Part shown: positions 19,094-22,246 of the stretch, in pieces
How the letters are laid out: each line of letters begins with the position of its first letter
Numbering within the stretch: the stretch's first letter is position 1
Assembly (NCBI RefSeq): GCF_002113885.1
Contig: NW_018479869.1
Location: 22,321-83,639 of the forward strand
Direction: 5' to 3'
Source of the DNA: Mizuhopecten yessoensis
Taxonomy: Eukaryota
DNA length: 61,319 nucleotides
Position numbers and translations under genes: made by a program
The notes under the pieces: model-generated
Database searches by the model: none
What the model was told of the DNA's origin: nothing
Seen by the model: the letters and a program-made list of their open reading frames with translations, nothing else

Positions 19094-22000
19094 TCACAGC
19101 TCTGTTTTCCTTCTATTTCGTCTTTCTTTTTGTTTTTTCATCATGTTAGAGATAGCGTCGTTGATTTTTCCTAGCGGTAAGCCGTTTTCACCCCCTAGTT
19201 GTCCCATTAGGCCCATTAAGCCTTCCATGCCACCCTTACCCCCATCTCCTCCCCCCATCAGACCACTGAGCTTACCCATTAAACCCTCCATGCCCCCTTC
19301 CCCTCCTTTACCAATAGCTCCAGCGAGCTGGCCCATTAATCCTTCCATTCCCTCTGCTCCTGTTCCTTCCCCGCCCATTGCCCCTGCTAATTTGCTAACC
19401 AACCCAGCCATACCCTCGCCCCCACCGTCTGTCCCTCCCTTACCCATTGCTCCTGCGAGCTGACCCATCAGCCCAGCCATACCCTCGCCCCCACCGTCTG
19501 CCCCTCCCTTACCCATTGCCCCTGCGAGCTGACCCACCAGCCCTGCCATACCCCCGCCGCCCCCGCCGCCTCCCAGCATTCCTCCTATCATGCCAGCCAG
19601 CCCTCCAGAATCTTTCTGGTCTGGGAAGACCGCATTCATAGCATCTTCCATGATCTAAAACAATTATTATTACAATTATTTGATGTATTGAAGACTATAT
19701 TCCGCTAAACTTGTTTATGAGAAGTGTTGAATTACATACTGAAGAACATTTTCAGCTTAAAAGTTAAAATAAATCGTATTCAAATGACAAATAATACCGC
19801 CAATTTAAATACTCAATATGTCGTAATTTTTTTCTCGGCATAGTAAAAACACAGCTTAAATGTTCGCGGTAGAGAAATTGGATGAACACCTGATAATCTA
19901 ACCCAAGTATCCACGAAGATTAAGTCATCGACAGTTCGTTTTTAGTATTAATATTTATTAAACAGAGTTAAATTAAAAATTAAAAATAAGTATAAATTGT
20001 GTCTAAGTTGCATTGAAAAAGAATAGATTTAAATCAGTTCAACTTACATTTTCAACAATTTTTTTGTCTTTCGCCTTGACGGCATCCTCCTCGCTCGGTG
20101 TTGTGTCTTCCGTGGGGTCCGTTGTTTGGTCCGCTGTTTCACTGGCACCTGCAGACTCCACCCCTCTTTCCGTTCCTTCTTGTCCCTCTGTAGGTTTTAC
20201 CTCGTTTATTGTGTCCTTATTGGTTTTACTTTCTTCTTTCGAAAATATCTTGACCAGTGTGACGTCATATTGTAGTGTAGAATTACCGGGTACCAAATTC
20301 CCTGTAAAAGTCATATAACTATTGGTCAGTTTTTATGTCATTAGAGGTTACGTCATCCGTAGTTACATACACTTGTTCCCAATAACATCCGAATGTCATT
20401 TTAAAAAGGCCAACAGGGGAGGTAGTTTTTTTACATTTCCTTTTATTAACATTTAACTACATCTGGACCTTGCCACACTGGTAACTTGTTATTTACAGAC
20501 TTGTAAACTTATAACGAAGTGTGACGACATATTGAGGTATATATATGATATAAATGTTAGGGGAAAAGGGAAACGGGCTGACGAAGATTGAGGCGGACAT
20601 TGATCAAAGAAAATCCTCTTCCGGCATGACTAAAACCTTGCGGAACTTCGATGAAAAATTATAATATGATAAAAAATTGCAACAGTGTTCTGAGTGTAGG
20701 AATGCAAAGAAGCCAGAATTCGAACCCGTACACCATTTCATTACATTCGTACTGTCGTTCCAACAAACTGAGCTACTTGGTCAACGACAGATCCCTGGTC
20801 AATTACAGAAGCCTGGTCAATGACAGAACACTGGTCAACGACAGAACCCTGGTCAATGACAGAACCCTGGTCAAATACAGAACCCTGGTCAACTACAGAA
20901 AACAGGTCAACGACATAACCCTGGTCAATGACAGAACCCTGGTCAACGACAGAACCCTGGTTAATGACATAACCCCGGTCAACGACATAACCCTGGTCAA
21001 ATACAGAACCCTAGTCAAATACAGAACCCTGGTCAACGTGATACAGTAAAAATATACAGTGTTAATGTTTTAGTCTTTGCCTGCAGTGGAACAGAAAACA
21101 TCAGTTCCTTCAATCAGTGTTATTGGACCGATATATCACGTCCCATGTCACATTAAAGTAGATCTTATTCTCAAGTCGACTCCTGTATTACCCTCTATAC
21201 ATGTACGTACCCTGTTTAGTCTGGCTATCTTTAACGCCGTATCCTAGCAACGGAGGTACAACCATTGACCTTGACTCCTGTTCACACATATCAAACAAGC
21301 CTCGCTCCAGGGTCGGGATGTCGACGAACTGGCCAAGGTGCACGATATACGGCGAATCTTCATTTGTCCTGGAGTAATAATTAAAAAAGTCAAATTATTT
21401 AAAAGTTCTGTAAAAGTTCTTCCGGTGCTGCGCAGTTGGTGCGGAAGTGATTGACACGCTTATTATTTACATCAAATCTGAGCTGGTCTGCCTCATATTG
21501 TCTGTCTATACAACACTTTTCTATTCTTTTATCAAAATGGGGCATATGTAGAGAACATTTGTAGCAGAGACGCATTTATCAAATTGAAATTCAAGATTAC
21601 ATTTTGAGAATGTGCTTGTCACTGTTACCGTTGCGCAACGATCGGCAGGTACAAGTGTCACAATATTATAACTTGTGTTGCAAAATATCAAAAGTTATCT
21701 AGAATTAGTGATTTTGTGTAAATAAGATACAGACAAAATATTATTTTTTTTCGAAATATTGACGCTCATTTTTTTATTATTAGTTTCAATTAAAAACTAT
21801 AATGATTGTTTCGATAATTTCCGAAAACTTTCATATTGGTTTTTATCAATTTATGAAAATTGATATTGACGTTACCGGAGACTACATTCTCCAAAATCGT
21901 TATTTGTTCGAACGCAAAATGTAATCTACCATAATGAAAATTTTGGATTTAATATAAGTACAAAGAAGAAAATAAGTAAATAACAAAAAATTAATAAAAC

Positions 22001-22246
22001 ACGAAATACAAACCTTGACTCAATAACGTTGTCAGTTCCGTGGATTTTGATGACGTAGTGCACTAAAAGCCTGTCGTCTGCCTGAGATTTTCGCAAACAA
22101 TCGCCTCCATTTTGAACTGTTTCCATGGTTAAGTCAGAAAGCTCGGTGTCTGCTTTGACTCTTTTGATGACTATTGTCCAAATGGCAGTGTACCACACAA
22201 GTACCATAATAAAAATCAATAATATCAATAATTTACCGGCATTCAT
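19094..22246 (-). CDS. Divergent ER-lumen FKBP-family protein (paralogue A), ~401 aa: signal peptide, degenerate FKBP domain, acidic linker, Gly/Met repeats, KTEL; exons 22246-22014, 21368-21211, 20301-20048, 19654-19094
   Basis: GT-AG junctions with phases 2,1,0, the same as the two neighbours. FKBP motifs: CLRKSQADDRLLVHY, LERGLFDMCEQESRSMVVPPLLGYG, VPGNSTLQYDVTLVKI. C-terminal KTEL. Exon 2 is absent from the ORF track and was translated by hand. Confidence 0.85.
20778..21037. repeat. 18-bp minisatellite (CTGGTCAAYGACAGAACC), ~14 copies, in intron 2 of FKBP paralogue A
   Basis: Read directly; it accounts for the LVNDRT repeat ORF. Confidence 0.9.

What the first reader, a model, noticed from the sequence alone, without database searches (positions are those of the whole stretch)
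19094..22246. ER FKBP whose EF-hands are replaced by an acidic linker and Gly/Met amphipathic repeats
Paralogue A keeps the signal peptide, FKBP fold, Cys pair, intron phases (2,1,0) and ER-retention signal (KTEL) of its neighbours. Exon 3, however, continues into a Glu/Thr-rich disordered linker where EF-hand 1 would be. Exon 4 has only an EF-hand-like relic (NAVFPDQKDSGG), followed by ~6 repeats of the type MAGLMGQLAGAMGKGG-x-DGGGEG. Short Met/Leu helices with Gly spacers resemble the Met-rich client-binding regions of SRP54, STI1-type domains and the GroEL GGM tail. This suggests a holdase-like or condensate-forming ER chaperone for a specialised secretory load (inference). I do not recognise this architecture among described FKBPs.
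Basis: partly seen in the sequence, partly recalled or inferred. Interest (0 to 1): 0.7.

Follow-up and report, generated by a model that had tools for sequence, protein, structure and literature searches.

The report
Scallop ER FKBP with Gly/Met-rich tail
Scallops express a conserved, apparently scallop-only member of the ER prolyl-isomerase (FKBP) family in which the usual calcium-binding EF-hands are replaced by an acidic spacer and about six glycine/methionine-rich short helices; what it does is unknown.

Summary
A 4-exon, 401-aa gene lies on the minus strand (22246..19094), and raw RNA-seq reads support all three splice junctions (223, 384 and 254 reads). Its product is identical to a predicted Mizuhopecten yessoensis protein that is uncharacterised and misleadingly named. 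Its parts are:
- an N-terminal hydrophobic segment;
- a full FKBP_C domain (E 4e-15) with the ER-type Cys pair but an altered pocket;
- a fast-evolving acidic linker;
- 6-7 units of the type MAGLMGQLAGAMG separated by Gly/acidic spacers;
- a basic C-terminus ending in an invariant RKTEL.

It sits beside two FKBP+EF-hand paralogues with the same intron phases (2,1,0). Orthologues with identical exon structure and synteny occur in Pecten maximus and Argopecten irradians. An HMMER scan of 1.84 billion representative proteins found no other credible match to the tail. dN/dS is about 0.09 for the FKBP domain, 0.2 or less for the tail and about 0.6 for the linker, so the tail is selected.

The "EF-hand relic" is not supported. 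The holdase or condensate function remains inference. I raise one new lead: scallops make abductin, a Gly/Met-rich secreted elastomer, which could be the client.

Verdict: real, expressed and conserved; a new architectural variant of ER FKBPs; moderate interest.

The parts
22247..22424 (-). 5' UTR; the transcript start is near 22424
   Evidence: RNA depth and read ends stop at about 22424, and contig X3 record 13 spans 22261-22424.
22014..22246 (-). Exon 1 (233 nt, followed by a phase-2 intron): Met1, the hydrophobic N-terminus and the first third of the FKBP domain including Cys50
   Evidence: The joint 21367|22013 has 254 reads.
22166..22231 (-). N-terminal uncharged segment (aa 6-27), followed by KRVKA|DT: a signal peptide or a signal anchor
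   Evidence: Sequence. It is 74% identical across scallops and V-[KR]-A-D-T is conserved. AF2 models a helix at residues 3-35 with pLDDT 80-85.
21211..21368 (-). Exon 2 (158 nt, followed by a phase-1 intron): core of the FKBP domain, with Cys106 and the W59-equivalent Leu98
   Evidence: This exon alone hits Pfam FKBP_C at 8.4e-6. Its best PDB matches are FKBP11 and FKBP2. The joint 20300|21210 has 384 reads.
20252..22093 (-). Genomic span of the FKBP_C domain (aa 52-147, across exons 1-3)
   Evidence: Pfam PF00254, E 4.4e-15, covering positions 3-94 of 94. PDB relatives are FKBP2 at 1.8e-11, FKBP11 at 6e-10 and FKBP14 at 1.7e-9.
20048..20301 (-). Exon 3 (254 nt, followed by a phase-0 intron): last FKBP strand, then the acidic Glu/Thr-rich linker (aa 151-215 = 20048-20242) in place of EF-hand 1
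   Evidence: The linker is 35-38% identical between species, with dN/dS about 0.6. A Val/Ala polymorphism at 20160 is seen in RNA.
20778..21038 (.). 18-bp x 14.5 minisatellite inside intron 2
   Evidence: TRF.
19094..19654 (-). Exon 4 (561 nt including TGA): the Gly/Met-rich tail and the C-terminus
   Evidence: It is an open frame of 186 codons. The joint 19654|20048 has 223 reads. It is single-copy in the genome.
19175..19603 (-). Array of 6-7 short Met/Leu-faced helical units (type MAGLMGQLAGAMG) separated by Gly/acidic spacers (aa 233-375)
   Evidence: Regex and alignment. The hydrophobic moment is 0.46-0.60, above composition-preserving shuffles (p<=0.011), with a periodicity peak at 90-100 degrees in all three orthologues. 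dN/dS is 0.2 or less.
19398..19565 (.). 69-bp (23-aa) tandem repeat, 2.4 copies at 90% identity, inside exon 4
   Evidence: TRF. It coincides with the hole in laid read depth.
19097..19174 (-). Basic C-terminal helix ending in RKTEL (KTEL codons at 19097-19108)
   Evidence: R397-K398-T399-E400-L401 are invariant in three species. KTEL and RTEL are C-terminal motifs of human ER proteins such as AGR2 and FKBP2 (PMC2140024).
19087..19092 (-). AATAAA polyadenylation signal directly after the stop codon

Best explanation
This is a genuine, expressed, single-copy gene of the Yesso scallop. It is a tandem-duplicated member of the ER-lumenal FKBP7/FKBP14 lineage, kept in at least three scallop genera. 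The EF-hand pair has been replaced by a 65-residue acidic disordered spacer and a roughly 150-residue array of 6-7 short amphipathic helices. Those helices have a Met/Leu face and a Gly/Ala face, are separated by Gly/acidic hinges, and are followed by a basic helix and the retrieval signal KTEL.

Shown: gene structure, splicing, domain content, conservation, purifying selection on both the FKBP domain and the tail, and restriction of the tail to scallop proteins in the databases searched.

Inferred:
1. The N-terminal segment takes the protein into the ER, and KTEL keeps it there.
2. The FKBP domain keeps Tyr26, Ile56 and Tyr82 (FKBP12 numbering) but has fixed F36I, D37E, V55D, W59L and F99Y. 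It therefore probably acts mainly as a proline/peptide-docking module with weak or no FK506-type isomerase activity.
3. The flexible Met-rich tail shields exposed hydrophobic or low-complexity stretches of secretory clients, as a holdase on a long leash. It would work like other Met-lined flexible binding surfaces without being homologous to them.

My confidence in the anatomy is about 0.9, in ER residence about 0.7, and in the holdase mechanism about 0.3-0.4. The confidence figure given for this explanation is for the mechanism.
For: - Splicing: all three junctions have 223-384 raw RNA reads each, and contigs from two further studies carry them.
- Identity: the model equals P0006 (OWF36624.1 / XP_021340211.1).
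- Domain: full FKBP_C at E 4.4e-15. The nearest solved relatives are the secretory-pathway FKBP2, FKBP11 and FKBP14. The Cys pair is invariant.
- Descent: paralogues B and C with EF-hands and KDEL/NEEL lie 4.5-14 kb away with the same intron phases. An unlinked FKBP14-like gene has the same exon plan.
- Orthologues: Pecten maximus and Argopecten irradians have identical intron positions, and the head-to-head FKBP+EF-hand neighbour is kept.
- Selection: dN/dS is about 0.085 for the FKBP domain, 0.2 or less for the tail and about 0.6 for the linker, with dS saturated.
- Retrieval signal: RKTEL is invariant, and KTEL is used by human ER residents.
- Helical amphipathicity exceeds composition-matched shuffles.
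- Expression: about 184 reads per million laid in run X19.
- Uniqueness: the tail finds no other credible match among 1.84e9 representative proteins and has no Pfam family.
Against: - There is no experimental or predictive tool result for localisation. The 22-residue uncharged N-terminal stretch could be an uncleaved anchor.
- AF2 models were poor (mean pLDDT 39.5 and 44.7 with only 3 sequences), so helicity of the units is a weak prediction.
- No client, tissue or stress-response information was obtained. No ERSE-type or conserved CRE promoter element was found.
- The middle of exon 4 had no laid reads, so its transcript sequence is not directly verified.
- The pocket changes could mean the FKBP domain is only a scaffold.
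- Only three species support the selection estimates, and dS is saturated.
Confidence: 0.38

Rival explanations
1. The tail is not a client-binding surface but a self-associating or membrane-adsorbing module. Uncharged Gly/Ala-faced amphipathic helices resemble lipid-packing-sensor type helices, and Met-rich low-complexity domains can form redox-sensitive condensates. The protein would then organise an ER subdomain or a gel, with the FKBP domain concentrated there.
For: The units have a Met/Leu face and a Gly/Ala/Gln face with no charges inside the 13-mer. They are multivalent, with 6-7 units on flexible Gly/acidic hinges. A bacterial secreted repeat protein (P0001) has converged on a very similar GLMGQLGG-plus-acidic-spacer design. 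Knowledge of ALPS motifs and Met-rich LCD condensates is from memory and was not tested here.
Against: The units are only 13 residues long, which is short for stable membrane adsorption. No structural, lipid or phase-separation data exist. The acidic spacers would oppose binding to anionic membranes.
Confidence: 0.2
2. The tail is a metal or redox buffer. Met thioethers spaced i, i+4 and i+11 on one helical face would bind Cu(I) or scavenge oxidants in the oxidising ER. The acidic linker and spacers would give low-affinity Ca2+ buffering that substitutes for the lost EF-hands.
For: The tail core (aa 216-375) has 19 Met in 160 residues, and the Met positions within the units are conserved. There are 18 acidic residues in the linker and 16 more in the tail. 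Met-only Cu(I) motifs in oxidising compartments are established knowledge (from memory, not tested here).
Against: There are no His or Cys partners. The classic MxM/MxxM motifs are not the spacing seen here. The linker evolves almost neutrally (dN/dS about 0.6). No metal-related neighbour genes were seen.
Confidence: 0.12
3. The protein is not ER-lumenal. Either the N-terminal segment inserts with the C-terminus in the cytosol, making KTEL irrelevant, or the protein is secreted as a Gly-rich structural component.
For: The uncharged N-terminal stretch is long (22 residues) with a KRxK flank on its C-side. The Gly-rich repetitive composition is reminiscent of structural proteins.
Against: The 15-residue C-flank is net negative while the N-flank is positive, which favours a lumenal C-terminus (inference). 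The ER-type Cys pair and RKTEL are invariant despite saturated synonymous divergence. All close relatives are ER FKBPs.
Confidence: 0.07
4. It is a decaying duplicate or an annotation artefact with no function of its own.
For: The FKBP pocket is degenerate. The tail is low-complexity and contains a young 69-bp duplication.
Against: The ORF and exon structure are intact in three genera. Purifying selection acts on the FKBP domain and the tail. Spliced expression is abundant.
Confidence: 0.03

Closest known systems
FKBP14 (FKBP22) / FKBP7 (FKBP23): ER-lumenal FKBPs with two EF-hands and HDEL
   Same: N-terminal ER-targeting sequence, one FKBP domain with a Cys pair, and a C-terminal KDEL-like signal. 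The gene has 4 exons with intron phases 2,1,0. It is a tandem neighbour of two such genes (PMC2140024; PMC12668782).
   Different: There are no EF-hands. Exon 3 runs into an acidic linker and exon 4 encodes a Gly/Met-rich repeat array. Five pocket residues are changed.
FKBP2 (FKBP13, RTEL) and FKBP11 (FKBP19)
   Same: These are the best solved-structure sequence matches. FKBP2 ends in RTEL. FKBP11 also has Leu at the Trp59 position (IPGLE against IPTLE here).
   Different: FKBP2 stops right after the domain. FKBP11 carries a C-terminal membrane segment (from memory). Neither has a 250-residue linker plus repeat tail.
Met-rich flexible binding regions: SRP54 M domain, GroEL (GGM)n tail, Hsp70 GGMP repeats, STI1-type domains
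   Same: The composition is Gly/Met-rich, and the idea of pliable Met side chains lining a hydrophobic binding surface is shared. NCBI auto-named the Pecten orthologue 'SRP54-like'.
   Different: No sequence or profile match to any of them was found (the atlas TM-scores to SRP models are 0.36 or less). The compartment (ER lumen) and the unit (a 13-residue amphipathic helix) differ. This is analogy only.
Abductin, the Gly/Met-rich elastomer of the scallop hinge ligament (consensus GGFGGMGGGX)
   Same: It is found in the same animals and has the same unusual Gly+Met bias. The scallop genome carries an abductin-like gene cluster on contig C5420 (PMC13052691).
   Different: The motif differs: there is no FGGMGGG and no Phe in the repeat units. 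Abductin was not among the hits of the HMMER scan with the tail. The protein here has an FKBP domain and KTEL, so it is a possible handler of abductin, not a homologue.

Membership tests
FKBP-type peptidyl-prolyl isomerase (Pfam PF00254) | Full-length match to the FKBP_C domain profile above the gathering score | tested here: met
   56.2 bits against a cut-off of 21.1, E 4.4e-15, profile positions 3-94 of 94. The result is the same in both orthologues.
FKBP-type peptidyl-prolyl isomerase (Pfam PF00254) | Canonical FK506/proline pocket residues (FKBP12 Y26, F36, D37, F46, V55, I56, W59, Y82, I91, F99) | tested here: not met
   From the alignment to human FKBP2: Y26, I56 and Y82 are kept. F36I, D37E, F46Y, V55D, W59L, I91V and F99Y are changed. 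The substitutions F36I, D37E, V55D, W59L, I91V and F99Y are invariant in 3 scallops, while the F46 position is Tyr or Phe. The numbering transfer from FKBP2 to FKBP12 is from my knowledge of the family.
FKBP-type peptidyl-prolyl isomerase (Pfam PF00254) | Measurable PPIase activity and FK506 binding | not testable with these tools
   This needs recombinant protein assays.
ER-resident FKBP7/FKBP14 subfamily | N-terminal ER signal sequence | tested here: inconclusive
   There is a hydrophobic N-terminus with a conserved V-[KR]-A|D-T site, but the uncharged core is 22 residues long. No signal-peptide predictor was available.
ER-resident FKBP7/FKBP14 subfamily | Conserved Cys pair of secretory-pathway FKBP domains | tested here: met
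   C50 and C106 are invariant and align with the two Cys of FKBP2.
ER-resident FKBP7/FKBP14 subfamily | Two C-terminal EF-hands | tested here: not met
   No EF-hand Pfam hit was found at E<=1 for the exon 3 and 4 pieces or E<=0.1 for the whole protein. hhalign against the EF-hand exon of paralogue C gives probability 1.1%. Neighbours B and C do have EF loops.
ER-resident FKBP7/FKBP14 subfamily | C-terminal KDEL-like retrieval signal | tested here: met
   KTEL is invariant in 3 species and is a motif of human ER residents (PMC2140024). Function in the scallop was not tested.
ER-resident FKBP7/FKBP14 subfamily | Shared gene structure and genomic linkage with bona fide members | tested here: met
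   The 4 exons and phases 2,1,0 are the same as in B, C and the unlinked FKBP14-like gene on C4843. The tandem cluster is conserved in Pecten and Argopecten.
SRP54 M domain (PF02978) / other Met-rich client-binding domains | Profile match to the domain | tested here: not met
   No Pfam family was found for the tail at E<=1. Atlas structural rows to SRP proteins have TM 0.36.
Abductin | GGFGGMGGGX decapeptide repeats | tested here: not met
   The tail units are M-[AE]-G-L-M-G-Q-L-A-G-A-M-G. True abductin-like repeats lie elsewhere in the genome.

The most novel reading that the evidence does not exclude
The gene encodes a scallop-lineage ER escort dedicated to Gly/Met-rich, aggregation-prone secretory cargo, above all abductin. 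Abductin is the rubber-like hinge-ligament protein that powers scallop swimming. The client-like Gly/Met tail would interact homotypically with the cargo to keep it soluble until export, and the FKBP domain would serve as an anchor or adaptor. This would be a case of a chaperone evolving a tail that mimics the composition of its client.
Probability: 0.12. Interest if true: 0.7.

Novelty: new variant of a known kind. Interest (0 to 1): 0.45.

Why it matters
ER FKBPs are known as FKBP domains combined with EF-hands, extra FKBP domains or a membrane anchor. A lumenal FKBP carrying a selected Met-rich amphipathic repeat array would add a new kind of accessory module to ER proteostasis. Met-lined flexible binding surfaces are so far known from cytosolic, bacterial and mitochondrial systems (my knowledge). 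The gene is also a clean example of how a tandem duplicate swaps a folded regulatory domain for a low-complexity one while keeping exon structure, targeting and retrieval signals. If linked to abductin or another scallop-specific secreted material, it would give biomaterials researchers a handle on how such aggregation-prone elastomers are produced in cells. It also corrects misleading public names ('homeotic protein female sterile-like', 'SRP54-like').

Tried and rejected
1. Word-index protein searches. The exon-4 peptide gave only a bacterial repeat protein, which is convergent. Residues 1-150 gave nothing. So no tree against FKBPs of other molluscs could be built, and the age of the gene outside Pectinidae is unknown.
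2. AlphaFold2. The whole protein and the FKBP domain alone were each run with only 3 aligned sequences. Mean pLDDT was 39.5 and 44.7, too poor for fold searches, which were therefore not run.
3. The ESM Atlas search of the tail gave no usable feature hit, and structural rows had TM 0.37 or less.
4. hhalign of the tail exon against the EF-hand exon of paralogue C showed no similarity. The origin of the tail sequence is unresolved. It is single-copy in the genome, so there is no evidence of exon shuffling from another gene.
5. Promoter motifs. No ERSE was found beyond chance. A CRE at -271 is not conserved in the orthologues.
6. Conservation of the N-terminus (74%) was considered as an argument for a membrane anchor. 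It was rejected because the clear signal peptide of paralogue C is about as conserved (about 70%).
7. Literature searches by accession, by the NCBI name of the Mizuhopecten protein and by topic found nothing on this protein.
8. The look-up of encoding contigs found no record for P0006 itself, so no independent full-length transcript contig was obtained.
9. I did not hand a typed, joined exon sequence to any search tool. Before the database ids P0006, P0005 and P0002 were available, exons were searched one by one by reference.
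Full report
**Observation**

Reading the minus strand of 18900-22500 and testing splice sites gives a four-exon gene.
- The exons are 22246-22014, 21368-21211, 20301-20048 and 19654-19094.
- All introns are GT-AG with phases 2, 1, 0.
- The reading frame is 401 codons with no internal stop.

One raw RNA-seq run of the same species (X19, 19% of the run read) supports every junction with hundreds of reads: 19654|20048 with 223, 20300|21210 with 384, and 21367|22013 with 254. 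Logan contigs from two other studies (X3, X4) carry the same joints. Alternative joints are at noise level (5 reads or fewer).

Coverage places the transcript start near 22424. An AATAAA lies directly behind the stop codon. About 184 reads per million were laid, so the gene is well expressed in that sample. The sample's tissue is coded and unknown to me.

Depth collapses in the middle of exon 4 (zero at 19355-19485, with reads clipped at 19582/19592). This coincides with a 69-bp x 2.4 tandem repeat at 90% identity. I read the dip as a mapping or repeat-allele problem, not as absence, but the central part of exon 4 is not directly verified in RNA.

**Identity**

A HMMER scan of the exon-4 peptide against 1.84 billion representative proteins returned one real hit, P0002 (E 1.7e-17), plus two compositional matches. 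A word search with P0002 then gave three proteins.
- P0002: Argopecten irradians XP_069114658.1, "uncharacterized", 392 aa.
- P0005: Pecten maximus XP_033762859.1, "signal recognition particle 54 kDa protein-like", 386 aa.
- P0006: Mizuhopecten yessoensis OWF36624.1 / XP_021340211.1, "homeotic protein female sterile-like", UniProt A0A210PJG5, 401 aa.

P0006 is letter-for-letter my model. The window is therefore Yesso scallop, and the gene is already predicted in public databases, but under uninformative or misleading names. No paper in the library mentions any of the accessions.

I did not hand a typed, joined exon sequence to any tool. Exons were searched by reference until these database ids became available.

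**Anatomy of the protein**

1. Residues 1-32. After MNAGK comes a 22-residue uncharged stretch followed by KRVKA|DT. V-[KR]-A-D-T is conserved and fits a signal-peptidase site, but the hydrophobic core is long enough for a signal anchor. No predictor was available. The flanking charges favour a lumenal C-terminus (my inference).
2. Residues 52-147. This is a complete FKBP_C domain (E 4.4e-15). The nearest solved relatives are the secretory-pathway FKBPs: FKBP2 at 1.8e-11, FKBP11 at 6e-10 and FKBP14 at 1.7e-9.
   - Cys50 and Cys106 align with the two cysteines of FKBP2 and are invariant.
   - From the FKBP2 alignment, the pocket keeps Tyr26, Ile56 and Tyr82 (FKBP12 numbering).
   - It has F36I, D37E, F46Y, V55D, W59L, I91V and F99Y. 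Apart from the F46 position (Tyr or Phe), these substitutions are invariant in all three scallops.
   - Leu at the Trp59 position is also seen in human FKBP11.
3. Residues 151-215. This linker has 18 acidic, 9 basic and 15 Ser/Thr residues out of 65. It is only 35-38% identical between species.
4. Residues 216-375. This segment has 64 Gly and 19 Met in 160 residues.
   - It contains five canonical 13-residue units of the type MAGLMGQLAGAMG plus one or two degenerate ones, separated by spacers such as KGGADGGGEG.
   - The orthologues have six to seven units as well.
   - Placed on a helix, Met1, Leu4, Met5, Leu8 and Met12 fall within a 100-degree arc, opposite Gly and Ala.
   - The hydrophobic moment (0.46-0.60) exceeds composition-preserving shuffles for every unit (p<=0.011).
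   - The periodicity spectrum peaks at 90-100 degrees in all three species.
5. Residues 376-401. This is a basic helix ending in an invariant RKTEL. KTEL and RTEL are the C-terminal motifs of human ER residents such as AGR2 and FKBP2 (Raykhel et al. 2007, PMC2140024).

**Surroundings and descent**

The window holds two further FKBP genes on the plus strand.
- C (26752..32350) has a very diverged FKBP domain, two EF-hand loops and NEEL. A retroelement sits in its intron 3.
- B (36705..39067) has a canonical pocket, two EF-hands and KDEL.
- Both have four exons with phases 2,1,0 at positions homologous to A.

An unlinked canonical FKBP14-like gene (contig C4843, HEEL) has the same plan, with exon 3 carrying the end of the FKBP domain plus EF-hand 1 and exon 4 carrying EF-hand 2 plus the retrieval signal.

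In Pecten maximus and Argopecten irradians the orthologue of A has identical intron positions and phases. It lies head-to-head with a 253-257-aa FKBP+EF-hand gene. Argopecten also shows a 231-aa one at the edge of the fetched stretch, and Pecten has an MFS transporter downstream. The MFS exons are syntenic in the window.

A is single-copy, and its tail has no second copy in the 988-Mb genome. Descent from an EF-hand-bearing FKBP7/14-type gene by tandem duplication is therefore well supported.

The sequence origin of the tail is not resolved. A profile-profile comparison of the tail exon with the EF-hand exon of paralogue C finds nothing (probability 1.1%). There is no EF-hand Pfam hit. The proposed relic NAVFPDQKDSGG lacks the position-3 and position-12 ligands and reads TSKEGKG in the orthologues. 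I regard the "relic" as unsupported.

**Selection**

I built codon alignments of the three orthologues from exact exon models and applied the Nei-Gojobori method.
- FKBP domain: dN/dS about 0.085.
- N-terminus: 0.14-0.17.
- Tail: 0.2 or less.
- Linker: about 0.6.

Synonymous divergence is saturated (dS of 1 or more), so these are rough values. The contrast between tail and linker is nonetheless clear: the tail is constrained as a protein and the linker mostly in composition.

**Mechanism**

Shown: the gene is a real, expressed, conserved ER-type FKBP paralogue with a novel tail.

Inferred: the protein enters the ER and is retrieved by KTEL. The altered but conserved pocket serves docking rather than efficient FK506-type catalysis. 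The array of pliable Met/Leu-faced helices on Gly hinges binds exposed hydrophobic or low-complexity segments of secretory clients.

I give this holdase reading about 0.35-0.4. The rivals are:
- a self-associating, membrane-adsorbing or condensate-forming module (0.2);
- a Cu(I)/redox/Ca2+ buffer (0.12);
- a non-lumenal or secreted protein (0.07);
- a functionless duplicate (0.03, effectively refuted).

Resemblance to the SRP54 M domain, GroEL GGM and Hsp70 GGMP tails is analogy only, with no profile or structural match.

**A new lead**

Scallops produce abductin, a secreted hinge-ligament elastomer whose second domain is Gly/Met-rich with consensus GGFGGMGGGX (PMC13052691). The Yesso scallop genome carries a cluster of such genes on contig C5420: 31 pattern matches genome-wide against 0 in the reversed-pattern control, most of them on C5420, and an ORF full of GGFGGMGGG repeats.

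A Gly/Met-tailed ER FKBP found so far only in scallops might be a dedicated escort for this cargo. This rests on shared taxon and composition only. I give it about 0.12.

**Limits**

- The structure predictions were too shallow to use.
- The word-index search with the FKBP half found nothing, so presence or absence of an A-type gene in non-pectinid bivalves is unknown.
- The tissue of expression is unknown.
- Promoter motif checks were negative.

**Verdict**

Its evolutionary reading (EF-hands replaced) is supported, its "relic" is not, and its functional idea remains a reasonable but untested inference. The gene is a new architectural variant of a known family, of moderate interest.

Noticed in passing
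window 26752-32350 (+): Paralogue C is a 4-exon FKBP+EF-hand gene ending in NEEL. Its FKBP pocket is even more degenerate than that of A: Tyr26 is replaced by Met and the YG motif is lost. It has a Lys/Glu-rich C-terminal extension. Its intron 3 (28656-32071) holds a retroelement with a reverse-transcriptase-like ORF on the minus strand (30946-31632).
   Followed up: partly
window 36705-39067 (+): Paralogue B is a canonical FKBP7/14-like gene of about 230 aa, with an intact pocket, two EF-hand loops and KDEL. The intron 3 boundaries are ambiguous, with several in-frame GT/AG combinations. A coding-looking minisatellite lies in intron 1 (about 37175-37470).
   Followed up: partly
window 18945-18990: A short element just downstream of gene A has very high word depth in transcriptome contigs (up to about 2650) and many different loose ends on both sides. 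It looks like a dispersed, transcribed repeat.
   Followed up: no
window 18700-19092: RNA depth continues, and even rises, beyond the AATAAA that follows the stop codon of gene A. This could be read-through, a long alternative 3' UTR, or the 3' UTR of the convergent MFS-transporter gene, whose last conserved coding exon ends near 13927. The library is unstranded, so I could not tell which.
   Followed up: no
window 20160 and 20276: Two expressed polymorphisms lie in exon 3. At 20160, A>G on the plus strand changes Val to Ala in the linker, and G is the majority allele in run X19 and in the X3/X4 contigs. At 20276, T>G is synonymous.
   Followed up: partly
G000:C5420, about 16-134 kb (loci L006-L010): A cluster of abductin-like genes encodes GGFGGMGGGNGG-type repeats. 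The pattern has 31 matches genome-wide, most of them on this contig, against 0 in the reversed-pattern control.
   Followed up: partly
G000:C4843:416000-425999 (L004): An unlinked canonical FKBP14-like gene has two EF-hands and HEEL. It shares the 4-exon plan of the window's cluster.
   Followed up: partly
protein P0001 (ENA metagenome, 293 aa): A bacterial secreted or lipoprotein-like protein carries six repeats of the type DLAGLMGQLGGLFGEGDGE. It is strikingly similar in design to the scallop tail units plus acidic spacers. It is probably convergent and has no Pfam family.
   Followed up: partly
window 7574-13927 (+): Exons of an MFS-type transporter gene, convergent with gene A, are syntenic with the Pecten maximus locus.
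   Followed up: partly
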